Positions 8,912 to 59,805 of a DNA stretch of 64,000 nucleotides are shown here, one piece after another. Where the stretch lies: assembly GCA_965603825.1 (NCBI GenBank), contig CBFDEM010000014.1:124001-188000 (forward strand), given 5' to 3'. Each line of letters starts with the position of its first letter. Within the stretch, counting starts at the first letter, position 1. The notes beneath the pieces were generated by a model that was not told the DNA's origin, did not search any database, and was given only the letters and a program-made list of their open reading frames with translations. The position numbers and the translations under genes were made by a program. Origin of the DNA: Blepharisma stoltei ATCC 30299 (taxonomy: Eukaryota > Protista > Ciliophora).

Positions 8912-11900
8912 ATGTTTTTATTATTTTGTTTATCAGTTTTTTTATGTGACTCTTTTGAAGTCTCAAGAATTCCTCCCACAAGCACACCACCTCCCAAAAG
9001 GCAATTTTCAGCTATGGATTATGATAAATCAAGTAATTCTCTACTTATTTTTGGAGGAAATCAAGGAGCATCATCAACCTTTAACGACGTTTGAAAATTT
9101 TCACTCAATGATTCATTATGAACAAATTTAGTATCTACAACAAACACTATACCAAGTAACAATTAGCCAGGCTCCCGGTATACGTCTGCTGGGTTTATCA
9201 ATCCAAATACAAGTATTTTTTATATTTTTGGAGGGATGTCAAAAAATGGTCCTTTAAATGAACTCTGAGCATTTGACTTAGAAAATTTGCAATGAAACCA
9301 AATAAACCAATACGGAGATGTCCCTCCTTGTAGATATAGATTTGCCTATAAAAAGTTTATAGACCAAAGTGGGAGCTTAAAATTTGCTGTTTTTGGAGGG
9401 AGTCTTGGCAATGGGCTGGATAATAATTTATTTATGTAATGGAGATTTAGATTGAATGTAGCAAATTTTACGTGGCAAAAACAAAAAAATAATGGGGCAG
9501 ACATAAAGAAGTATAGAGGAGCGACAATGGAGTATTATAATGGATGCTTATATGTAGCTGGAGGAGATGTAAATAATGTTCTTTATAGTGAAACCAGCTA
9601 TCCAAACTTATTTTGGAAATATGATTTATCGTTACAAAAATGATATAACCTTACGAATACTATTTCTTGATACCAAAATCGATATTTATCCGGAAGTGCC
9701 ATATATAATGATTTTTATTATTTATTTTATGGGTGATCTGATCAAATAGATGGAGATGTAAATACAGTTGATAGGGTTGATTTATCAGATCCTAGCTATA
9801 AATGGACAAAAGCTAGCATAAATGAACTTAAAAATTATTATTTAATACCGCGAGATTCATTTGGCTTCACCTCTAATGATAACAAATTTTATATATTTGG
9901 AGGTTATAACGATTATATTTCAATAGGAAACAGTTTAATTGAGCTTGATTTATCTATCTCCCCAATCACTTATCAAACTTTAAGTATAGAAAGGCTTGAC
10001 CCTATCCCAAGAATGCACCATTCCCTCGTTTTAATTAGCACAAACCTCTACCTCTTCGGAGGCGTCAATAAAAATACCTATTTAAATGACCTATGATTAT
10101 ACGACTCAATTTCAGACAGCTGATCCATTGTGACCGCAAAAGGAGCAGCACCCTCCGCAAGAGCCAGCCACGCAGCTGCCTCACAAGGAAAAGTATTCCT
10201 TATATGAGGAGGCGAAACAATTGATGGCTATGTTAACGATATGTACAAGTTTGAGCCCTCCTCAAAAGTCTGGACTGAAATTATTCCAGATTCATCCTCA
10301 TTTCCTAGCAAAAGAAAAGGGGCTTGCATGGTTGTCGATATTCCTTATGTTTATATTTTCGGAGGACTTACTGACACAGGAGCATCTAATGAATTGTGAT
10401 CGTTTGATATAGGAAAAAATGAATGGGAATTAATTGATTATAATGGAAAAGTCCCTTCTGCAGCTTATCCTACATGTGAGGTAATAACACAAAATAATAC
10501 AAAATTTATTTATGCTATGTATGGATATACAGATGGGTCTGCACCTTTAGGGTCTATATATGCATTTTCTGTTGAGAGTAAAACTTGGATTAAAATATAT
10601 GATCCTGCTCCTGATATTCCTTATTCAAATCGAGCTGGGGCTGCTATAAAGTATTTGAATAATAAGGTGCTGGTTATTGGGGGAGAAGAATGATCAACTG
10701 ATCCTCGTAAAGATGTGTACTTTTTTGATCTTTCTAAGCAGAAAACTTTACAAATTGGGGCACTTCCAGAGTTTTATTACAACGGAGCCTCTGTTTATTT
10801 TAAAAATCATGTATATATGCATGCAGGAGGATCTGTAATAGGATCCACAATGAGAAATGCGATAGCCAAAAATAGTTTTTTTTTCCTTGACATAAGTTGT
10901 TCATATGGGAAAATCTGTGGATCTGTCTGCAGTATTGGGACTTATGCAAGCAATAATGATTGTCTTTTATGTCCAGAAGGAACTTATAACGACGCTATTG
11001 GGCAGTCTTCATGCATAAAATGCCCAGAAGGAACTTATAATCCAACCAAAGCAGCCAGTGATGTAAGGCAATGCTTACCATGTGCGAATGGATGATTTAG
11101 TGATATTGAAGGCGCTGTATATTGTAAGGAATGCCCTTCTGGATCGTATTGTCTTACAGGAAGTTCTTATCCAAGCAGCAGTAAATTAGAACTAATATCA
11201 GAATCTCAACAGCCAGACTTATATAAAGCTGATATTGATAAACTAAACCTTGGTGTAGAAATTGGTCTTTCTATTTTAATTATATCTGTGTGCTTTTCTC
11301 TTATCTTTTTAATTTTCTTACGAAAACACAGAAACCACATGACAGCTTGAGATTTATATGATGATATGCACAATCGAAAAATCGGCCAAAATATCATTCT
11401 GCATAAAAACGGCTTTGGAGGAATTTTCAGCTTGATTTTTATTTTTATATCGCTTTTTATAATATATGACTCAATTTTGGAATATTCTCTCAATAATATT
11501 ATAGAAACAAAAGCTTTGGTTCCTATAGTATCTGTTCAATACGAAATATCAGAATTCACCGCTAATATAGAAATTACAGCAAAATTCCATCAATACGGTG
11601 GAAGCTGCTCAGAAATCGCCAATAAATGCAGTTCATCAATTTCCATTATTACTTCAGATCTTACTTATTATTCCATCAAATTTAAATGTTCTAAATCTGA
11701 AGACAATTCCTGCATTATCACTACAAATTGCTATAATTGTGTTATTAATACAGGAGCTTATATTTACTACAATCTCCACGAAATCCAAAGTTTTGCTTCA
11801 GCAATCAGCTTAAATGTGACCTCAGAAAGCTCAATTCCTAACGAAATGAGCTCTGTGTACCAAAATCTTCTCCCCAGCAATGGTACCATTTTTCGGGGGT

Positions 11901-12463
11901 ACCACGAAAGCAATTTTTCTTTAAATATGATTCCATCAGTATTTCAGTCCTACACCTTAGAATGGCCTAGAAAAATAACAGGCTATCATATTTCTATAGA
12001 TAATCCTCCATTGCCAGGCTCTCAATGTTCAATTGTTGAGTAATTTATAAATAGTTTACCATTCACAGCTGGACTTAAGCTCAAGGTGATTTTAGATAAA
12101 AGTGAGTCTAGTTTGTATACAACAAGGGATATAAGTAAAACTTTTATGATACTGGTTAGCAGTTTACTTGGATCGGTATTTGGAGTTATGGAAGTTGTAG
12201 GAGGAGTTATGAAATTTTTTGAAGAAATTGAGAGTGAGATGCTGGAAAAAATAAAAAATAGAAATAATTGGAAGGATGTGAAGGATAATAGGAAACATTT
12301 AGGGATTGAATTAAATAAGCAGGAATGTGTTGAGGAAGAAAATGAAGAAGGGGGAGAGATGGAGAAGCTGAAGGGATTGGGGCCAGTTAATACAAGGCAT
12401 AATTCTTTAGTAGAAACGCCGAGGTTTATAGAGAAATTGTATGAGCTTAATAAAGATTTCTAA
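8912..12463 (+). CDS. Signal-peptide kelch-repeat plus Cys-rich (ephrin-receptor-like/GCC2-GCC3) multi-pass membrane protein
   Basis: One frame after removing three 15-nt introns (9156-9170, 9436-9450, 12040-12054) and reading 14 TGA as Trp (9092, 9119, 9266, 9293, 9641, 9668, 9734, 10094, 10121, 10205, 10397, 10691, 11093, 11348). Repeated FGG...NDLW kelch blades, CPEGTY repeats and three hydrophobic segments. Confidence 0.88.
9156..9170 (+). other. 15-nt spliceosomal intron
   Basis: GTAACAATTAGCCAG, A at position 10, holds an in-frame TAG; removal restores the kelch frame. Confidence 0.85.
9436..9450 (+). other. 15-nt spliceosomal intron
   Basis: GTAATGGAGATTTAG, A10, in-frame TAA. Confidence 0.88.
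12040..12054 (+). other. 15-nt spliceosomal intron
   Basis: GTAATTTATAAATAG, A10, in-frame TAA; joins ORF 11366..12043 to 12086..12463. Confidence 0.88.
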
Positions 12464-14297: not shown

Positions 14298-15923
14298 ATG
14301 TTTATCAGTCCGACTGCTCCAGACACCCCTAAAAATCGATTTTGGCGCAAATGCGAGTTGTATTTCTCATTATCGCTAGGACTTTATGCTGCTTATGCAA
14401 TGATGATTGAATCTTATTATTTGTCACATAAGCTTGCTGATTCTAATAAAATAGTGGGTCTAAAACAAAGTACATTCCCATGAACCAGCTATATAGATCT
14501 GTATGACGGCCAGCTCAGTTCTTTTAGAGAAAGTCTCCCTCTTCTATCTCTATTTGCATTTGTGTTTATCGTCTTTAGAAAAATTCTACTTCGATTCAAG
14601 CCAGAATTAGAGACTCAACTTACCTATTATATTATCTTTGGACTAGGGTATGCAGGATACATACATGGTCCAGGGGTAATTTATTTAGTGTTAATGGTTG
14701 CTGTGAATTATTTTTTGGTTGAAAATTTTGCTGGGAAAAAATTCTTTGCAATTTCGATTTGGGTGCTAAATTTAGGCTTCCTTATAATAACTGAACTCTA
14801 TACTGGCTATAAATTTGCGTGGTGGTCATCAAGTCTAGCATTTTTAGACAGAGTTCCTCATGATTTACCATGGTGGAGAGTCACTAATCTCTGCATGCTA
14901 AAAGTAATCAGTTATGCAATGGACTATCATTGGAGTATCCTCAATCTCCCAACGCCTACCAAAGAAAAGCACAAGCTTATATGTTCAGAATGCACAGAAT
15001 CAATAGACTGCTTAGACTATAGGACAAAGTCTCACGCCTCTCACTATTCTTTCAAAGCCTTTATTTCATATTTCTTTTACCCACCTCTTTATTTAGCTGG
15101 GCCTACTATTTCATATAATGCCTGGATTTCCCATGTACAAGTCCCTCAGCAAACTTTTGACGCCAAAAGGCTTGGGATGTACATATTGAGGTTTTTTATG
15201 ATTTACTTTATATTGGAATGGTCTATCCACAATCTTTATTTTCCAGGAATTGCCTCCAATCCTAGAAATAAGAGATTATGGGAACAATTTAATGTCTGGG
15301 AGCTGATCGCGACTTCATATGTTATCCTCAATTGGATTTGGCTTAAGTTTACAGTGATTTGGAGATATTTCAGAATCTGGGCTTTGCTTGATGGAATTGA
15401 ATGTGTGGAAAACATGGTCCGCTGCATGTCGAATAGCTATTGTTTTGAGCAGTTCTGGAGAATGTGGCATCGATCTTTTAATCAGTGGCTAGTCCGCTAT
15501 CTTTTTGTGCCACTTGGAGGGAGGAAATATAAAATTTATAACATTTGGGTAGTTTTTGGATTTGTGGCACTTTGGCATGATTTAACCTTAAAACTGCTAG
15601 CTTGGGGCTGGGGGATGTGCATTTTCATCATGCCAGAAGTTCTCGCCAAAGCTTATTTCCAGCAGCCAAAGTTTGCTGAATTTAGAAAAACGCTTACCTA
15701 CAACTGGTTATGTGCTTTTGGCGGAGGATTTTATATCGTCCTTCTAATGATGGCAAACCTCATAGGATTTTCATTTGGAATTGAAGGGTTTTATATCGCA
15801 ATGAGAGAGTTTTCGACACCTGAAGGGAGTTGGATGCTGTTTAAGTTTACGATTTACCTTGGCTTTTGTGTTCACTTCATGTTCGCACAGAGAAAAGCTG
15901 AGGAGAAGTTTAAAGGATTTTAG
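14298..15923 (+). CDS. MBOAT O-acyltransferase, GUP1/HHAT-like
   Basis: ORFs 14298..14483 and 14562..15923 are in frame through TGA 14481. Motifs YPPLYLAGP, FWRMWHRSFNQWLVRYLFVPLGG and FVALWHD. Confidence 0.9.
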
Positions 15924-18557: not shown

Positions 18558-19730
18558 ATGGACTTTAGCAATAAAATTCAAGCTTACAAAGATACCGGAA
18601 TTCAAAAACCAAGACAACGTGGTATTGAAGAACCATGGGAGTGGGAAATTAAATCAGACACTTCCTTTAAGCTTCAAATACCAGATAAAAAATTCTCATA
18701 CCCACAAAACACTACTTTCTCTGTTCCTCATAAAAGTGTGTGTGTTACAGAAAGAAGCAAAATAAGCTACCAAATCAATAGTCCAGATACTGATTATCAA
18801 GTCAAGAAAGCCAATTATAAACAACGCGGAGCATATCCATATAAATATACTGCAGACGGAGATTGTATCTATAAAGCCGAAAATGCATTACCAAAAATTG
18901 AGCCTGTTCCTTTATATCATGACATAACGATCCAAACTTTTCCTCCGTATATCCAAGAGGTCTCTAGTAAAATACTTATTGATGATAATCGTGAAACACC
19001 ATACACTCAAAGAAAAATTCATACAATAGTCGATCCTTTTGAAATTAGCCTGTTTCCAGAAGAATCACATGCAAAAATTGAAGAAATAGCCTCAGATGAA
19101 GAGCAAAAAATAGCTATAAATGAAGAACAAAAAATAGCCACAAATGAACAAAGAAAGGCAGCCGATTTTGAAGGAAATTCTTATAAAATAGTCCAGCCAA
19201 AAAGAATCATAGAAAATGCTTCTAAAGGTTCAGATACACTGTTCAATATTACGACCTATAAGACCTCAAAATGTAGCTTAGGCTCAGACTGCACAGGAAG
19301 TTGCAATGATTATCATTTTGAAGGCGAAAGAAGGCGCGCTCCATCAGATTTTTTCTATATCCCTGAGCTCTGTGAAAATATCCCGAACTGTAAAAGTGGC
19401 AACTCTTGCACAAAATCACACAATGCTATTGAGATTATTTATCACCCTCAGATGTACTTGTCTCATTTCTGTCCATATTCATCCACGTCAATAAAATGTG
19501 TATTAGGGAAAGCTTGCAATTTCAAGCATCTTGAGAAAAAATTAAAATCAAAATGTCCTCAAGAATTCTTAGGCAAAATTTTTTCAGAATTTGATGAAGA
19601 GAATGAAAACTTAGAAAATATAAATCAGGATGCTAATGGAAACGCAGAAGGTGATTTGATAAAAGGCAAAACTAAGGAACATCCAATGGATGGGAAGAGG
19701 GCTTTTGAGGATGAGTGATATTCTGCATAA
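18558..19730 (+). CDS. Unkempt-like CCCH zinc finger protein
   Basis: YKTSKC..C..C..YH..ERRR, C..C..C..SHN..E.IYHP..Y...C..C..C..KH. The TGA at 19716 read as Trp extends the ORF to TAA 19728-19730. Confidence 0.78.
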
Positions 19731-35642: not shown

Positions 35643-37031
35643 TTAAATGGCTGCTTTATCTTTTATAGGTGACCATACTTTTCTGGGTGAATTTATTATT
35701 TCAGGGTGGATGCTTTCTCTGCCTTCTCTTAGTTCTATAGGTTGGACTGTTCTTTTTTGAGCTCCAATGTAAAGCTGTCTTGGTCTTCCGATTTTTTTGA
35801 CAGACTCAGACATCATCTCATGCCACTGTGACATCCAGCCGATGACTCTAGCTAAAGCAAAAATCACAGTAAACATGTCACGTGGGATTCCAATTGCTTC
35901 AAGGACAATCCCAGAATAAAAATCTACATTTGGAAATAGCTTTCTTTTAATAAAATAATCGTCACTTAAGGCTTTTTTCTCTAGCTCTATCGCTAAGTCA
36001 AAAATGTCTTGCTTGTTGCATTTTAAATGAGTTAAAACTTCATGAGCAATCTCTTGAATTATATGATTTCTTGGATCATGGTTTTTATAAACACGATGGC
36101 CAAAACCCATAAGTCTAAAACTGTCGTTAGGATTTTTAGCTTTTGCAATATAGGTATCGACGTTTTCAACACTTTTTACTTCATCAAGCATTGCGAGGAC
36201 AGCTTCATTTGCACCTCCATGCATAGGGCCCCATAAGCTAGCTATTCCAGCAGCTACACAGGCATATGGGTTTGCAAGAGAGCTTCCGGCAATTCTGACA
36301 GTTGATGTGGAGGCGTTTTGTTCGTGATCGGCGTGGAGGATAAATATTTTTTCAAGAGCATTAGCTACGACAGGATCGACTGTAAAATCATCAGACATCG
36401 GGTCTGAAAACATCATATACAAGAAGTTTTCAGTGTATCCGAACTTTTTCTTAGGAAAAACTATTGGCAGTCCATATGCAGTTCTATACGCAATTGCTGC
36501 CATCATAGGGAATTTCGCTAAAACTCTAATTGCAGCTGCTTCACGTTGTTCAGCTACCAAGACATCGATATCTTCATGCATGAACGCTGATAAAGCTCCT
36601 ACAACACCCACCATAATTGCCATTGGATGTGCACCTTGCTGGAAGCTGCTATAGAAGTCAATAAGTTTCATATGAATCAACATCTCATTTTTCACAGCAT
36701 TTTCAAATCTTTCTAGTTCAGCAGTATTGGGCAATTCTCCATATAATAGCAAATAGCAAACTTCAAGAAAGGTACAATTATTGGCCAGATCTTCGATTGC
36801 ATAGCCTCTGTACCATAGCTCTCCTTTTTCTCCATCAGTATATGTAATTGCAGAAAGACAGCTTGATGTTGAAGTGTAGCCTGGGTCAAGAGTGAGGCAG
36901 CCTAGCTGAGTAAATAGAGAACGAATATCGATAACTGGTGGTCCTTGAGTTCCTCGAATAAACGGAAGCTTTGCAGATGTTCCATCAGGAAGAGTTATTG
37001 TTGCTTCTCCTTCTATAATAGCTCCTTCCAT
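35643..37031 (-). CDS. gltA: Citrate synthase, proteobacterial type II (GltA-like)
   Basis: DPGYTSTSSC, AHPMA, LHADHEQNAST, LWGPMHGGANE, LMGFGHRVYKNHDPR, FPNVDFYSG, KIGRPRQLY. Confidence 0.95.
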   Translation of the reverse strand: MEGAIIEGEATITLPDGTSAKLPFIRGTQGPPVIDIRSLFTQLGCLTLDPGYTSTSSCLSAITYTDGEKGELWYRGYAIEDLANNCTFLEVCYLLLYGELPNTAELERFENAVKNEMLIHMKLIDFYSSFQQGAHPMAIMVGVVGALSAFMHEDIDVLVAEQREAAAIRVLAKFPMMAAIAYRTAYGLPIVFPKKKFGYTENFLYMMFSDPMSDDFTVDPVVANALEKIFILHADHEQNASTSTVRIAGSSLANPYACVAAGIASLWGPMHGGANEAVLAMLDEVKSVENVDTYIAKAKNPNDSFRLMGFGHRVYKNHDPRNHIIQEIAHEVLTHLKCNKQDIFDLAIELEKKALSDDYFIKRKLFPNVDFYSGIVLEAIGIPRDMFTVIFALARVIGWMSQWHEMMSESVKKIGRPRQLYIGAQKRTVQPIELREGRESIHPEIINSPRKVWSPIKDKAAI

Positions 37032-37971
37032 ATTTTATTCACGTCACAAGCTATTAAGAAAAGATATTATAATGATTGGAAAGACTTAGAGTCTAAAAAA
37101 TTAACTATAATTATGCCATCGTAAAAAATTAAATATTCTTACCGATAGAATAAAACTAATTAAATTATTTTTAGAAAATTTATTGAAATTATATTAAAGG
37201 TTAGGCTTGTAATATTGGAGACCAATTTATTACTAAGCTTATAAGTTATAGAAAAATTCGAATTTACTCAAATAAATAAGTTAAGTTATCAATAAAATAT
37301 TATAGCGAAAATAATAGCAAGAGATGCTCTCAGTTGAACTCTAAGTGCACAGTAAATTATCATTTAATCATTTTTATTTAATTAACTACGCAATTAATAA
37401 TGAATAGAAGTTTCTCTCATAGTTATCCATTATTTTTCTTTATATTACAATAAATAATAGATCTCTCCAAAAACCATAAATCTCTTTTCATTTAAATTAT
37501 ATAATTCTGTTAATTCATTTAAGCAAGTTTATTTTTTCAAGGTATATGCTATAGATGAAATAGAGAATCATATTGAGTCTTCAATCTTAAATTTTGAAGA
37601 TATATGCAATAAATTATTGCTCAAACTCTTTAGTTTATTTATTAATGCTATTTTAACAGTAGATTATTGAATTGGAAGGTCTTCAGGATAATTTTTTCTC
37701 TTTTGTAGTAAATTTCATTATACGAGGTACGTTTTAAGAATATAGAACTTTATTTTAATATTAGCATTAATATAGATTTTAGAAGCTTCATTTAGAGTCA
37801 AAGATCATTCAGCATCAAAGAAAACGCTTATAAAGGGCTAAATAAAAAACAAAGTTTCAAATTATTTGAATTTAATTGATCAATTCTTAAAATATATATA
37901 TTTTGGTAAAAATATAGATATATTATAGATCCAAATATATAAATAGCTTTATTGATATTAAATTTTAAGCA

Positions 37972-38044
37972 GGACCCATAGCACAACTGGTAGTGCAACG
38001 GACTCCAAATCCGCAGGTTGGGCGTTCAAGTCGCTCTGGGTTCA
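37972..38044 (+). tRNA. tRNA-Trp(CCA) with 4-bp anticodon stem
   Basis: Cloverleaf: acceptor GGACCCA/TGGGTTC, D stem GCAC/GTGC, anticodon arm ACGGA-CTCCAAA-TCCGC (CCA at 38005-38007, A27-C43 mismatch), T arm GGGCG-TTCAAGT-CGCTC, discriminator A, no intron. Confidence 0.96.
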
Positions 38045-38045
38045 C

Positions 38046-38051
38046 TTTTTT
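38046..38051 (+). terminator. RNA polymerase III oligo-T terminator of the tRNA gene
   Basis: T6 run beginning 2 nt after the discriminator base. Confidence 0.8.
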
Positions 38052-38852
38052 GTCCAGTTGAATTATGAACTATTATACCAATTTATCGCTTGTTTTAAGC
38101 AAATTCTAGCTTTTAAATATAATTTTATTTGTGCTTGCCCTTTTTATAGGGTATTATCAGAATTAAAGAATTCCTTAAAATTTTGACAGATTAGCTCATC
38201 TCTACAATAAAAATCAAAATTTCAATAGAAATTAATAAAGGAAATATAAATATATATAAAATAAAGATATAGATAGAATTATTTATAATTTAATATTGCT
38301 ATTATATAATATTTAATTGCAAATTTGTCTATTGCTTTATAAATCACATAGATGCTTAATTTAGAAAGTTTTTGCATATAAGAGTTTTATTTTATTTGAA
38401 AGGGCAAAAGAAAAATTTTCTACTCACTTTATTGTGCGATGATTGAATAGCAAATACGGTGAAAATTATTGTTGCCAAAGCTTATCATAAATATGAACTT
38501 ATTCTGTCAATCAATATTGCAATTTTTATTTCCTCTATTTTTCTATTACTTAAACAAAGATTTTGATTATTTATGCTTAAATAAAAAATGCCCATATGAG
38601 CCTGCTGCTTTGAATAATTAATCTCAAATTATCTTAAAGATCTAATGAATTTTCTATTGCAATAATTTGGCTTGTATTTATTCTATTATTTTTAGCTTTA
38701 AAAACAAATTGAAATCTTGCTATTGAACAAATATCTATTATATCTCTCTAGATGCAAAATTCAAACCTATATATATCTTCCATTTATCGAAATCAAATTC
38801 CCTAAAAGTAATTAATCAGCGTTATTCTGAATCATATGTTAAATATTAAATA

Positions 38853-39923: not shown

Positions 39924-41348
39924 TTACTCTTCAATTATCCCTTCTTTTGTGTATTCCTGCATTTTTGTAATATTTAATGCTATTAATGTGCCAATAATTG
40001 AGGCGAGGATTGGCACAACTGTCATAGCGAATTTCATATAATTTACACTGTCTAAACTTCCAGCATTTAATAAGATACTTATTGCAATGCCAAGGGAAAA
40101 TTTGTCGACAAGACTAACAGCGCCTCATACAAAGGCTCCTGAAGAACCATATTCTCCTACAAAAAGGGCAACCATTCCAGTTGATGAATTTAGCTGTAAG
40201 GAAAATCCAATTCCTAAAAATAGTGCAATAATGAATACTAAATTCTGGTAATCTGGAGTTAGAAATACTAATGGAATTGTGGCTCCAACTATAAAAATCA
40301 TTCCTATTTGGAATTGCCTTTTTCTGCTTAATTTTTCACCTATTTTCTTAAGCAAAAACGAAGTCCCTACACTTCCAATGTAAAGCACCATAGGGACAGA
40401 TGCAAGCTGCAGTGGAGTTTTATTATAATTACCTTCAGCATCATCTTTTCCTCCCATCTCCAAAACTGTAGTTAAATAAAACGGCAATAATCCTGGCGGC
40501 ACATTATTTGAGACTCTTGCCAAAGTATAGACAGCTGCAATCAAATACAATTCTCTCTTGTTCAGCCATTCTTTTCACGTTAGTTCTGTCTTTTTATTAT
40601 TTCCTAATTCATCTTCATTTTGAATTTTCAGTTCTCTATACCCACTTTGTGTTTCTTCTGTCAACTTATTTTCTTTAATGTTTCAAATAAACAATAAATC
40701 CGTAATTGCACCAGCTGTCAAAATAAAAGCACACAATAAGCTAAACTGCAACTTAGGATTTTCAATAAAATTAAAAAAAATCAAAGCTGCTAGTAGAACA
40801 GCAAAATTCGAAATATAGGTAAAGCCACTTCTAAGGCCAATTAATTTTTCTTTTCTTTCTTTTAAAGGAGATAATGAAGGTATTAAAGCAATATGTGGGA
40901 TTTGTACTGCAGATCATGCAGCTCCAGATGCAAAAGAAAAAACTGAATATCAAAATCCTTGAGCTATGACTCTACTGCTTCCTTCAAGAAGATCACAAGG
41001 GTAACAATCCTGCCATGTAAAGAAAAAAGTAACGCTAGTTATAACAGTTCCATAAATAAACCAAATCATCCTTTTCCCAAACCTCGATGTGAATTTATCT
41101 GAGTAAAATCCTACAAGTGGGGTCGAAATACCATCAGAAATTTGAAGCATAAGAACTACAATTCTATATCAATGTTACCCTGCTGTGACCGTGGAAAGGT
41201 TTTGGACGTATATAATGTAGTACATCAAGAAATTCACCCAGCAAGCTGCACATAAGTCATTCATTACATGCCCAATCCCATACATTCATATAGTAAATTC
41301 TGTAAGTCCATCGTATTTTTTATCAACTAATCTTTCATTGTCATTCAT
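39924..41348 (-). CDS. MFS transporter, MFSD12-like
   Basis: YGIGHVMNDLCAACW, QISDGISTPLVGFYSDK..FGKR..W and SGAFVW(TGA)GAVSLVDK. One 15-nt intron (41164-41178) and six TGA=Trp (41286, 40950, 40914, 40683, 40575, 40125); ends in TAA. Confidence 0.9.
41164..41178 (-). other. 15-nt spliceosomal intron
   Basis: GTAACATTGATATAG, A10, in-frame TAA. Confidence 0.88.
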
Positions 41349-54679: not shown

Positions 54680-57037
54680 TTATGATCTAGGGTTAAATTC
54701 CTCTTCTTCATTGTTGCTATCCAAAGCATGTGCTGTTTGGTTATTTTCTCTTTCAGACAGCTCTTCATCCATTCCTTCTGGAGCCTTGCTAAGGTCACTG
54801 AAATATCCAACTTTGTCAAAAACTTCAAGTCCCTTAAATTCATTCCATTTCCTTATAAAGAACTCAGAAAACCTCACATATAGCAATCCAATAATTGCCA
54901 CAACCAATACTATGATTATAATAATTCCACTAGTCCCAATAGAATCAGCTGCACACTCAAATCTATATGGCTCCAAATCTACACTTACCCCACCCACACA
55001 AGTATCCCCAGCAACTCTTCTATATCCTCTAGACACTTCATAATAAATATCCTCATCTTGGCAATTTTCCTCTTCCACAACTCCTTCAACTTTCTTGCAA
55101 GGTCCATCATTTTCACTGAAATATCCCAAATCGCATTCATAATCCAGCTTGGTGCACTCACAGTTATATTTAAACGATCCCCTTTCGAACTCTTCACCGT
55201 TATAGCATTCGCTTTCTCTTTTCCTTCTTACATATTCCATTTTTCTACCTAAAAGACATTCATTTCCAGTCCTCCCATCATTTGGGCTCCACAGCTCATA
55301 GTCGCTGCCTTCTCCTGGCTTATCAGCTCCTTTGCATTTAGGCTCGTGAAGTGATGAAAAATCAATGGCGACGCTGACTCCTTTTCCTCCAACTTGGCCA
55401 TAAAGGACGAAATTTTGAGATGTGGCTTTTGGCTCAATGATGATGTTGTCAACTTCTATAGGAGTATCAGTGAATTTGATGGACTCCCAAGTAAGACCTT
55501 CATTCCATGAGAAATAGACGCGGTCTGTAGCCTTTTGGTCGTCAGCCATGACTATAATAGCGCCATGGTCTCCTATTTCATAGATATAGGACCCTTTTTT
55601 GATTTCACTCCATGTAAGACCACCATCCCTAGATAAATAAGTATTTACTTCATCAGGCTTGTTTGAGAGGTATTTTCCGACGTTGCCAACACCAATGATG
55701 ATCCCGACCGCGTTTTCTGATGAATAAGCGGTCCCAAATTTTTGAGAAGTAATTGAATGTAAATGCAATGAGCAATCTTCATCCTTGCACAAAATTCGTT
55801 TTCCATTTGAGTCTTTTTCAGGGGGAGTTATTGTTTTCCAGACTCCTCCTTTATCAAAAGTAATTGCTGTTTTCTTATATGTAATTTCTGCATCTTTTCC
55901 TTTTTTCTTTTTCGTGTCAGAAGCATCAAATTCTTCATTAGTTTTTTCTCTATCATAAACATTTGCAATATAAATCCCTTCTAGTCCATATACCTTATCA
56001 AAATCACAATAACCTTTAGGGTCTCTTACATTATGAAGGAGAGAAATTGAGAATCTTCTACCAGTCACGTCAGATTCATAAATATTTCCATATCTTGATC
56101 CTGGTCCATAATGATTTACCTGGACAAAAACTGACCCTTCTGAAGTGTCTAACAAAGTGTAGGAATGCTCTGGGATTCTTTTGATAGGTAAATCAGCTTT
56201 ATAGAATTTTTCAATGTTTTTGTCATTGGAAACCATCAGTTGGACATCTTGAGAATCCTGTTCTATGGACTGAGCAACTAATATATATCTGTCTGCAAGT
56301 AAAAATTTGTTGCCATGAGGTACAAGAATTGAAGAAGACTGGAAGAAATCATCACTTTTCACCATGTCAACATTGTAGCTCCATCCTGCTAACTTTTGGT
56401 CGCCTTCTTGAAGACTTCTGGTCACATAGATTCTTTCTTTTGGAATATTTCTTTTAATATATTTAGCAAGATTTTCATATGCCCACGAAAACTGGACTAC
56501 ATAGTCTATGAGTTTTGTCCATGTTTGCCCGAGATCTTGAGTTAAATATAAAGCTCTGTACTTTTTGCAAGGCTCATCAACAAAATCTGAACACTTCGTC
56601 CACGATGCAGCTAGTCCCCAGTCTCTCTCTGTAGGATGAAAATGATACTCTTCCATTGGTCTTCCATAATTTAAAGCTTTTATCGTTTTCCCACAGTCTT
56701 CTGAAAACCAGTTAAGCCCTGCACTCCCCAGCATCACTACAACTTGCTTATCAGCTGGATTTACTAATATTTGTGTAACTTTTCCAATTGTGGAGCCTGC
56801 TTTCTTGCCTTCTTTTTCTAGAATTGGAGATAGCGGCTTCCATGAAAAGCCTTTGTTTTCGGATCGATAAACAGAATTTTCAGTGGTGAGTAGAAGCATG
56901 ACATCATCTTGGGCACCACAAAACTTTATGTCAGTAGCTGGCGCGTTTAGCTCAATGTATTGATATTCTATTCTGTCTGGGTTTGGCTCTGCAATGACAA
57001 ATGAAACTAAGCAAAGTGACAGAAAAGGCAGGACCAT
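54680..57037 (-). CDS. Sortilin/VPS10-domain sorting receptor
   Basis: Signal peptide, Asp-box repeats (SENKGFSW, TQDLGQTW, TFDKGGVW, SRDGGLTW, SWNEGLTW), 10CC module (CLLGRK..CECT..DYECDLGY..GYRRVAGDTCVGG), TM helix, acidic tail. Confidence 0.95.
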   Translation of the reverse strand: MVLPFLSLCLVSFVIAEPNPDRIEYQYIELNAPATDIKFCGAQDDVMLLLTTENSVYRSENKGFSWKPLSPILEKEGKKAGSTIGKVTQILVNPADKQVVVMLGSAGLNWFSEDCGKTIKALNYGRPMEEYHFHPTERDWGLAASWTKCSDFVDEPCKKYRALYLTQDLGQTWTKLIDYVVQFSWAYENLAKYIKRNIPKERIYVTRSLQEGDQKLAGWSYNVDMVKSDDFFQSSSILVPHGNKFLLADRYILVAQSIEQDSQDVQLMVSNDKNIEKFYKADLPIKRIPEHSYTLLDTSEGSVFVQVNHYGPGSRYGNIYESDVTGRRFSISLLHNVRDPKGYCDFDKVYGLEGIYIANVYDREKTNEEFDASDTKKKKGKDAEITYKKTAITFDKGGVWKTITPPEKDSNGKRILCKDEDCSLHLHSITSQKFGTAYSSENAVGIIIGVGNVGKYLSNKPDEVNTYLSRDGGLTWSEIKKGSYIYEIGDHGAIIVMADDQKATDRVYFSWNEGLTWESIKFTDTPIEVDNIIIEPKATSQNFVLYGQVGGKGVSVAIDFSSLHEPKCKGADKPGEGSDYELWSPNDGRTGNECLLGRKMEYVRRKRESECYNGEEFERGSFKYNCECTKLDYECDLGYFSENDGPCKKVEGVVEEENCQDEDIYYEVSRGYRRVAGDTCVGGVSVDLEPYRFECAADSIGTSGIIIIIVLVVAIIGLLYVRFSEFFIRKWNEFKGLEVFDKVGYFSDLSKAPEGMDEELSERENNQTAHALDSNNEEEEFNPRS

Positions 57038-58019: not shown

Positions 58020-59805
58020 CTAAAATTTACGATCTCTTAGTACAGTCCTTTTGGACTTTCAATCCCACTCACTTTTTCTAACCTGCATACTTGAATGATT
58101 TTTATTTTCCTTTTCAAGCTGCGCGATTTTTCACTCTAATTCTTTTTTTTCTTTTTGCAAGTTTTCTACCTCTTTTATCCCATTTGCCTGCTCCACTTGG
58201 TCTCTCAATATAGTTTCCAGCATTTCTGTTTTTTCTTTTAATTCTTGATTTTCAGATTGAATTTCAATAAATTCAGCTTCTATATTCTTTTTAGAAGACA
58301 AAAGCTCTGAATTTTGCTCTTTTAGTTTTTTATTAATTGCCATTAGTTCTCTTATCATTTTGACACTGTCGTATAATTTTTCACTTAAAACTTCTTGGGA
58401 TAAAGGGAAATCCTCAGTTTTACCTCGGGATTGAGAAGCAGCTGTATGAGGAACGGGAGTTGGCTCAAAGCTAGTAGATAATTCTAGCGATTTCCTTAAA
58501 TCACGTATACGTTTTATATGGACAGATTTTAATGGAAGTTTTTCCATTTCTTGCAGTCGTGATTTTTGAGTTTTTCTATCCAGTGATGCAATTTCACTGA
58601 GAAAATCCAGCTGACTGTTTGCTTGGTCAAGCTCTTTTTTCAGTCTTTTTATTTCTTTCTATATATATTTTACTTTTAACTCCCTGATGATTTTAGTTTT
58701 TGGGTCTATATTTTGCACAGGAATATTTGAAATACTTCCTGCTTGTATAGCATAGTTGAGAGTACTATGATTATCCTCAAAAAAAGTATCTATCGGAGAT
58801 ATACACGCTATCATTAAGCAATAGCTGTTTCCTCCAATGCTTTGCTTTAGCAGACTTGTAAGCTTCGAATTCCTATACGGCACAAAGGCTTCATTGTTTT
58901 CTGCTAACGTTGTAATAACCTGCCTTAATGTAAACAGCGCTTTATTGATTTCAATGCTTTCTTTTAGTGCTAAGCCTTCATTTCCAGTCATTGCTGTTTT
59001 CTCACTTCCAGCTAAGTCTACTAATTGAAGTCTGCTTGACACAATTCTGCCTTCTTCTTTATCTAAAGCTTCAAGATTCAATGAAAAAATTGAATGGGAC
59101 CTTGAAGAAGTACTGTTTATATTATGGGAAGCCATAATCTTGTTCCTTAATCCAGAATTAAAGTGGCTTAATGCTTCTTGATATGTAAAGCATGGGAAAA
59201 TACAAAGATTTTCTACATAGAATTCATCGCTTTTATTTCACCTCATCTTCAAGCCAGGGGAGTTTGGAGTAAGCTGGGCTGGATTTAATAAATCATATAT
59301 ATTTTCATTGTAGATCTGAATATATGTACAATTTACAGTATATTCAACTTGGCTTTCAGACTGCTTAATTTCGTCAAAAAGCGCTTTAACTGTTCTAGGG
59401 ACAAGACCAATATTTTCATTTTCCTAATTATGTAATACTTTTATGATGGGCTTTAAGCCTTTATCATATTCATACCCTTCCATTGTAAAAGTTTTCCCAG
59501 ATCCAGTAGGCCCATATGTAAAAACAGTTGCATTAAATCCTTCAACCACTTTTTTCACAAGTGAATTTAATTTTAATCTAGCGAATAATTCTTCTTGTGT
59601 AGAGCTTTCATCAAAAACGTCGTCAAATTTGAACCTTTTTTGCTGTTTTGATTCTGGGAATTTCACTCTAATTATTTTTTTACACAAGGGACTTCTTATC
59701 AGTCTCTGGCTGGATTCGTGAGTTTATTAGACCTTGTCTAGATTCCTCAGGAAGAATTGGTCTTACTCGAACAACAACTTCAATTCTTGTCCTATTTTCT
59801 TCCAT
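58020..59805 (-). CDS. Kinesin, KIF12-like; 3' end uncertain (may extend to 57798)
   Basis: VVVRVRP, YGPTGSGKT, LKMRW(TGA 59238)NKSDEFYVENL, NSTSSRSH, DLAGSE, VPYRNSKLT; introns 59668-59683, 59424-59438 and 58659-58673; TGA also at 58131 and 58059. Confidence 0.88.
58659..58673 (-). other. 15-nt spliceosomal intron
   Basis: GTAAAATATATATAG, A10, in-frame TAG. Confidence 0.88.
59424..59438 (-). other. 15-nt spliceosomal intron
   Basis: GTATTACATAATTAG, A10, in-frame TAG inside the motor domain. Confidence 0.92.
59668..59683 (-). other. 16-nt spliceosomal intron
   Basis: GTAAAAAAATAATTAG, A11; explains the frame change in the motor N-terminus. Confidence 0.88.

What the first reader, a model, noticed from the sequence alone, without database searches (positions are those of the whole stretch)
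37972..38044. tRNA-Trp(CCA) with a shortened 4-bp anticodon stem: candidate decoder of the reassigned UGA codon
Seen: a perfect cloverleaf with anticodon CCA, but the top anticodon-stem pair is A37998-C38014 (27:43 mismatch), leaving 4 bp. It has its own T6 terminator and sits alone in a 1.8-kb spacer. Established: a CCA anticodon cannot normally read UGA, and 4-bp-stem tRNA-Trp(CCA) together with an altered eRF1 has been proposed as the UGA-to-Trp mechanism in Blastocrithidia and the heterotrich Condylostoma. Its sufficiency in ciliates is debated. Inference: this gene supplies UGA decoding for the ~48 UGA codons in the window without a UCA-anticodon tRNA. The mechanism has precedent, so novelty would lie in this organism or allele.
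Basis: partly seen in the sequence, partly recalled or inferred. Interest (0 to 1): 0.9.

Follow-up and report, generated by a model that had tools for sequence, protein, structure and literature searches.

The report
Known Blepharisma short-stem tryptophan tRNA
This is a real tryptophan tRNA gene with a shortened anticodon stem that probably lets the ciliate Blepharisma stoltei read the stop codon UGA as tryptophan, but this exact gene and this explanation were already published in 2023.

Summary
Observation confirmed: tRNA-Trp(CCA) at 37972-38044, A27:C43 unpaired (37998/38014), 4-bp anticodon stem, T6 terminator, alone in a 1,821-bp spacer. The genome (41.46 Mb, 64 contigs) is the Blepharisma stoltei ATCC 30299 macronuclear assembly. 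The gene is one of six identical copies; my scans found no 5-bp Trp tRNA and no UCA tRNA except tRNA-Sec. UGA=Trp holds in the window: 43 in-frame TGA in 19 of 41 ORFs, falling on conserved Trp columns. The main eRF1 has Ala67. All of this is published: Swart et al. (bioRxiv 10.1101/2023.10.09.561518) list this very locus (Contig_21:161972-162044), show the identical sequence, about 173,000 tRNA-seq reads, no C34 editing (99.96% C) and the same stem in two other Blepharisma species. Most likely the short stem relaxes wobble-position proofreading so one tRNA reads both UGG and UGA, outcompeting a UGA-weak eRF1. This was shown for other 4-bp Trp tRNAs in yeast and E. coli; I found no assay of this allele. 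Residual rival: an expressed tRNA-like(UCA) RNA elsewhere in the genome, also published. The scan noted the other copies earlier (s1-673448, s1-646637, s1-646680). Verdict: already known, low interest.

The parts
37972..38044 (+). tRNA-Trp(CCA) gene, 73 nt, no intron; one of six identical genomic copies (= Contig_21:161972-162044 of B. stoltei ATCC 30299)
37998..38014 (+). Anticodon arm: unpaired A27 (37998) and C43 (38014), 4-bp stem 37999-38002/38010-38013 with C28:G42, 7-nt loop, anticodon CCA 38005-38007
37979..37990 (+). Internal Pol III A-box-like stretch (tRNA positions 8-19); A9 is wild type
   Evidence: sequence; promoter role from general knowledge of tRNA genes
38024..38032 (+). Internal Pol III B-box-like stretch (T arm, positions 53-61)
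   Evidence: sequence; promoter role from general knowledge
38046..38051 (+). T6 Pol III terminator; all six copies end in C plus T5-T6
37967..37971 (+). 5-nt leader AAGCA shared by all six copies whose flanks are otherwise unrelated
35643..37031 (-). Left neighbour, citrate synthase (0 TGA, 5 TGG); context only
39924..41150 (-). Nearby gene (MFS-transporter-like by my recollection of its motifs; family not scanned) with 5 in-frame TGA; codons 79 and 192 fall on conserved Trp columns. Example substrate of the decoder

Best explanation
This is one of six identical Pol III genes for the only cytosolic tRNA-Trp of Blepharisma stoltei. Its top anticodon-stem pair is open (A27:C43). The tRNA is made unedited, keeps CCA, and reads UGG by Watson-Crick pairing. 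It also reads UGA through a tolerated C34:A mismatch at the third codon position, because the unpinned stem relaxes ribosomal discrimination. At internal UGA codons it wins against an eRF1 that recognises UGA weakly (main paralog has Ala67), so UGA means Trp while UAA/UAG stop. Shown here: structure, copy number, absence of other candidate Trp tRNA genes, UGA=Trp, eRF1 residue. Shown in papers: expression and no editing for this sequence; higher UGA readthrough by 4-bp stems in other tRNA-Trp backbones. Inferred: that this allele itself does the UGA decoding, and the physical mechanism.
For: Structure. Six identical copies and no other Trp tRNA: DNA search, CCA-loop pattern scan with ARAGORN on all hits, and the published tRNAscan table. 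No UCA tRNA but Sec: pattern scan at chance level (40 hits vs 50 control), 30 of 40 checked by ARAGORN, all negative; Sec tRNA found; same result published. UGA=Trp: in the 39924-41150 gene codon 79 faces W in 38/45 and codon 192 W in 43/86 BLAST alignments (12/12 in MAFFT); Ras and ADP-ribosylglycohydrolase Pfam domains continue across TGA; many full-length Ras domains genome-wide contain TGA; eRF1 paralogs have TGG or TGA at the same conserved Trp (23, 52); all 41 main ORFs were defined to end at TAA/TAG and run long that way. tRNA-seq: 172,863 C vs 41 T at position 34. The 4-bp stem tracks UGA=Trp across heterotrichs and karyorelicts. 4-bp stem raises UGA readthrough about 7-fold in yeast and about 2.5-fold in E. 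coli. UGA looks like a less favoured Trp codon: 25% of Trp codons, unevenly spread over genes (permutation p 5e-5), e.g. 0/13 and 1/25 in two Trp-rich genes.
Against: I found no readthrough or charging assay of the Blepharisma allele in the papers searched. A 4-bp stem alone is not sufficient: Paramecium biaurelia (UGA stop) has one, and 2,677 standard-code bacterial genomes have only 4-bp tRNA-Trp (41). An expressed tRNA-like RNA with a possible UCA anticodon and a second TrpRS exist and are untested. The uneven TGA use correlates with GC3 (rho -0.59), so base composition can explain part of it. Expression of this particular copy cannot be separated from its five twins.
Confidence: 0.85

Rival explanations
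1. A non-canonical cognate decoder reads UGA: the published Contig_39 tRNA-like(UCA) RNA, perhaps charged by the second, N-terminally extended TrpRS; the CCA tRNA then reads mainly UGG.
For: That RNA is CCA-tailed, at 7,800x in YAMAT-seq, 93.8% conserved across Blepharisma, absent from Stentor, and Blepharisma has two cytosolic TrpRS (Swart SI). Missed by standard tRNA finders, so my scans would miss it too.
Against: It does not resemble tRNA-Trp, its paralogs are degenerate, TrpRS2 is expressed at 3.7 vs 98 RPKM. Condylostoma, Loxodes, Blastocrithidia and Amoebophrya read UGA as Trp with 4-bp CCA tRNAs and no UCA tRNA found. It would leave the 4-bp stem in every Trp tRNA unexplained.
Confidence: 0.07
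2. The open 27:43 pair is incidental; UGA is read by ordinary near-cognate wobble of tRNA-Trp(CCA) simply because eRF1 has largely lost UGA recognition.
For: Normal 5-bp tRNA-Trp(CCA) is already a UGA readthrough tRNA in yeast. B. japonicum eRF1 recognises UGA most weakly. 4-bp stems occur in UGA-stop organisms.
Against: Independent UGA=Trp lineages share the 4-bp stem while Stentor and Fabrea, which also have Ala/Gly67, keep 5 bp and stop at UGA. Opening the pair raises readthrough in yeast and E. coli. This rival and the best explanation are partly additive.
Confidence: 0.06
3. C34-to-U editing, a C34 modification, or export of mitochondrial tRNA-Trp(UCA) provides a UGA-cognate anticodon.
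For: Editing precedent in Leishmania mitochondria; a mitochondrial tRNA-Trp(UCA) exists in B. stoltei.
Against: C34 is 99.96% C in 172,929 reads. Export of mitochondrial tRNA to the cytosol has no precedent known to me.
Confidence: 0.02

Closest known systems
Blepharisma stoltei tRNA-Trp-CCA-21 (Swart et al., bioRxiv 10.1101/2023.10.09.561518, Fig. 1 and source data)
   Same: The same gene: identical coordinates (161972-162044) and identical 73-nt sequence; same six copies; same proposed role.
   Different: Nothing found.
4-bp anticodon-stem tRNA-Trp(CCA) of Blastocrithidia nonstop and Condylostoma magnum (Kachale et al. 2023, known to me through papers citing it)
   Same: CCA anticodon, stem unpinned at the top, no editing, host reads UGA as Trp, eRF1 with Ala/Gly67.
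   Different: Blepharisma appears to use UGA only as Trp and keeps UAR as stops, while those hosts reassign all three stops. Their tRNAs were assayed; this allele was not, as far as I found.
Loxodes magnus 4-bp tRNA-Trp(CCA)
   Same: Published ARAGORN drawing shows the same open A27/C43 top pair in at least one variant.
   Different: Over 100 gene copies, several sequence variants, ambiguous UGA (Trp or stop).
Bacterial 'Blastocrithidia-like' tRNA-Trp(CCA), e.g. Ca. Zinderia insecticola; Hirsh (G24A) and A9C suppressors (PMC13092985)
   Same: UGA reading without an anticodon change.
   Different: Hirsh and A9C act through the D arm; this gene has G24 and A9 unchanged.

Membership tests
tRNA gene (RF00005), Trp isotype | Cloverleaf above the gathering score with anticodon CCA in a 7-nt loop | tested here: met
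   62 bits vs 29; ARAGORN Trp(cca)
tRNA gene (RF00005), Trp isotype | Transcribed, matured and CCA-tailed | tested here: inconclusive
   No tRNA-seq run could be laid (X14 gave no contig; the X9 piece came from another copy's flank). Published YAMAT-seq gives about 173,000 reads for the six identical genes together.
tRNA gene (RF00005), Trp isotype | Charged with tryptophan | not testable with these tools
   Inferred: it is the only CCA tRNA for UGG codons
Blastocrithidia-like 4-bp AS tRNA-Trp(CCA) (definition in PMC13092985) | Anticodon stem of 4 bp, unpinned at the top (27:43), with a 7-nt loop | tested here: met
   A27:C43, pairs 28-31 intact
Blastocrithidia-like 4-bp AS tRNA-Trp(CCA) (definition in PMC13092985) | No A9C and no G24A change | tested here: met
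   A9, G24
4-bp AS tRNA-Trp UGA-reassignment system | Host translates UGA as Trp | tested here: met
   published
4-bp AS tRNA-Trp UGA-reassignment system | No nuclear tRNA-Trp(UCA) and no 5-bp tRNA-Trp(CCA) | tested here: met
   Pattern scans plus ARAGORN (10 of 40 UCA-pattern hits not fetched); only tRNA-Sec has UCA; published genome-wide scans agree. Non-canonical tRNA-like RNAs are not covered.
4-bp AS tRNA-Trp UGA-reassignment system | No C34-to-U editing | not testable with these tools
   Published: 99.96% C
4-bp AS tRNA-Trp UGA-reassignment system | eRF1 Ser67 replaced by Ala/Gly (proposed by Kachale, disputed by Swart) | tested here: met
   MAC3627 (L043) Ala, MAC14978 (L044) Ala, MAC11380 (L045) Ser
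4-bp AS tRNA-Trp UGA-reassignment system | The open pair raises UGA readthrough over the paired variant | not testable with these tools
   Shown for yeast and E. coli tRNAs; no assay of this allele found

The most novel reading that the evidence does not exclude
Blepharisma does not rely on this tRNA alone: UGA (about 44,000 codons, apparently never a stop) is read partly or mainly by the non-canonical tRNA-like(UCA) RNA with its own TrpRS paralog, with the short-stem CCA tRNA as the older, transitional decoder. That would catch a codon reassignment moving from near-cognate to cognate decoding. The candidate RNA lies outside this window and was already flagged as an open question by Swart et al.
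Probability: 0.07. Interest if true: 0.7.

Novelty: already known. Interest (0 to 1): 0.1.

Why it matters
The mechanism matters for genetic-code evolution and suppressor-tRNA design: a change outside the anticodon can reassign a codon. But this gene, its structure, its expression, its lack of editing and the eRF1 context were all reported in 2023 and are cited as established in 2026 (PMC13092985). What remains open is a routine functional test of this allele and the charging state of the tRNA-like(UCA) RNA. The finding is a good positive control for the scan, not a discovery.

Tried and rejected
Sequencing or assembly error at 27:43: rejected (six loci, three species). Pseudogene: rejected (invariant copies, terminators, sole Trp tRNA, published reads). 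Bacterial or mitochondrial contaminant: rejected (nuclear contig among ciliate genes; copies on four contigs). Hidden 5-bp Trp tRNA: two tRNA-like hits with TCCA in an enlarged loop (L031, L034) are degenerate genes, 71% alike to each other and 55-59% to Trp versus 58-64% to Gly(UCC), published as low-score Phe and Undet; the other pattern hits were Gly(UCC) or chance. Alternative codes: reading UAR as sense was not needed; TAA/TAG end the long ORFs. An 8-mer genome search was too unspecific to use. The genome-wide RF00005 search scored only 63 candidates, so it was not used as a census. The PDB search with the Rab N-terminal piece stopped short of the TGA. I did not read Kachale et al. 2023 itself, and did not fetch the Contig_39 tRNA-like(UCA) locus.

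Full report
Observation. ARAGORN and Rfam find a single tRNA in the window, tRNA-Trp(CCA) at 37972-38044 on the + strand. Rfam marks one non-standard pair, 27:43. By standard numbering A27 is 37998 and C43 is 38014; pairs 28:42 to 31:39 are Watson-Crick, the loop has 7 nt, and A9 and G24 are unchanged. The predicted fold is the cloverleaf with a 4-bp anticodon stem. A T6 run follows at 38046-38051. The gene lies in a 1,821-bp, 23% GC spacer between citrate synthase and an ORF without Pfam hit.

Source. The genome has 41,464,486 bases in 64 contigs, matching the 41-Mbp, 64-sequence macronuclear assembly of Blepharisma stoltei ATCC 30299, a ciliate reported to read UGA as Trp (PMC9942806). The identification is exact: the window's gene is at C14:161972-162044, and the tRNAscan-SE table in the source data of Swart et al. 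(bioRxiv 10.1101/2023.10.09.561518) lists Contig_21 161972-162044 Trp CCA; the other five copies I found match its entries base for base. The paper's tRNA-Trp-CCA-21 sequence is identical to the window's.

Trp tRNA census. Six identical copies lie on four contigs with unrelated flanks apart from a 5-nt leader and the T run. A pattern scan for any CCA loop followed by a T arm gave 45 hits; ARAGORN called only the six Trp genes, four Gly(UCC) genes and two degenerate tRNA-like genes. A scan for UCA loops gave 40 hits against 50 in the control, and none of the 30 checked was a tRNA. The only UCA tRNA is tRNA-Sec. The published genome-wide scans agree.

Genetic code. The 41 main ORFs, taken to TAA or TAG, hold 43 TGA and 131 TGG codons. 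For the gene at 39924-41150, translated with X at TGA and aligned to 150 homologues, codon 79 faces Trp in 38 of 45 alignments and codon 192 in 43 of 86 (12 of 12 in MAFFT); codon 342 faces Trp in the three closest full-length homologues and other aromatics elsewhere; codon 67 faces mostly aromatics; codon 156 is a variable hydrophobic site. Pfam Ras and ADP-ribosylglycohydrolase domains continue in register across TGA. Many full-length Ras domains genome-wide contain TGA. The three eRF1 paralogs have TGG, TGA and TGA at the same conserved Trp. Contigs of a probable RNA run cover most of that gene without gaps or changed letters, so the TGAs seem neither spliced out nor edited (RNA status is a guess by the tool). 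TGA use is uneven among genes (permutation p 5e-5) and falls with GC3, which fits a less favoured codon but also base composition.

Release factor. The paralog published as the highly expressed one (MAC3627 = L043) has Ala at yeast position 67; MAC14978 also has Ala and MAC11380 has Ser. The paper's supplement says one Ala and two Ser; its own alignment gives two Ala and one Ser by my count. Swart et al. argue that Ala67 is neither needed nor enough, since Stentor and Fabrea have it and stop at UGA, and cite weak residual UGA recognition by B. japonicum eRF1.

Mechanism. Shown in the literature for this sequence: about 173,000 YAMAT-seq reads over the six genes and 99.96% C at position 34; the same stem in B. 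japonicum and B. undulans; only 5-bp stems in UGA-stop heterotrichs. Shown for other tRNA-Trp backbones: opening the top pair raises UGA readthrough about 7-fold in yeast, with altered dependence on ribosomal protein eS30 (10.1101/2023.06.19.543857), and about 2.5-fold in E. coli (PMC13092985). Inferred for this allele: it reads UGG and UGA, the latter through a tolerated C:A wobble mismatch, in competition with a UGA-weak eRF1 (confidence 0.85). Against sufficiency: 4-bp Trp tRNAs also occur in UGA-stop organisms. Rivals are an expressed tRNA-like(UCA) RNA with a second TrpRS (0.07), eRF1 weakening alone (0.06) and editing, modification or mitochondrial export (0.02).

Limits. Expression of this copy cannot be separated from its identical twins. 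I could lay only assembled contigs, none from tRNA-seq. I did not read Kachale et al. 2023 directly.

Verdict. Real, correctly read, very likely functional as proposed, and already published down to the coordinates; a 2026 paper cites Blepharisma as an established case. The scan's own notes list the other five copies with the same reading; they are repeats, not support. Novelty: already known. Interest 0.1.

Noticed in passing
window 37234 and 38675-38688: One DNA run (X5) has contigs with extra DNA relative to the window on both sides of the tRNA gene: about 410 bp at a TA at 37234-37235 and about 580-590 bp at 38675-38688. They look like germline IESs, which are well described in Blepharisma (PMC9942856, not read).
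   Followed up: no
L044:1453-2757 (+), L045:1453-2748 (+); G000 C37 and C28: Two of the three eRF1 paralogs have an in-frame UGA at codon 14 (conserved Trp) while the main one has UGG. Could be feedback by premature termination, but about a third of Trp codons are UGA anyway. Noted before by the scan.
   Followed up: partly
L043, L044, L045: Residue 67 of the eRF1 paralogs is Ala, Ala, Ser by my count and in the published alignment, whereas the supplement text says one Ala and two Ser.
   Followed up: yes
L031:1489-1560 (-) = C33:56559-56630; L034:1468-1541 (+) = C37:127654-127725: Two degenerate tRNA-like genes with good acceptor, D and T arms and enlarged anticodon loops containing TCCAA; 71% alike; published only as low-score Phe-AAA and Undet predictions.
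   Followed up: partly
window 18558-19730 (+) and 58020-58547 (-): TGA lies 4 and 13 codons before the TAA/TAG end, inside the zone where UGA is reported depleted; these could act as real or leaky stops.
   Followed up: no
window 14298-15923 (+), 54680-57037 (-) versus 9527-12043 (+), 39924-41150 (-): Strong gene-to-gene difference in UGA use: 1 of 25 and 0 of 13 Trp codons versus 10 of 16 and 5 of 8.
   Followed up: partly
window 37967-37971 and the five other copies: All six Trp tRNA genes share the leader AAGCA directly before position 1 although the flanks are otherwise unrelated; possibly a start or RNase P context.
   Followed up: no
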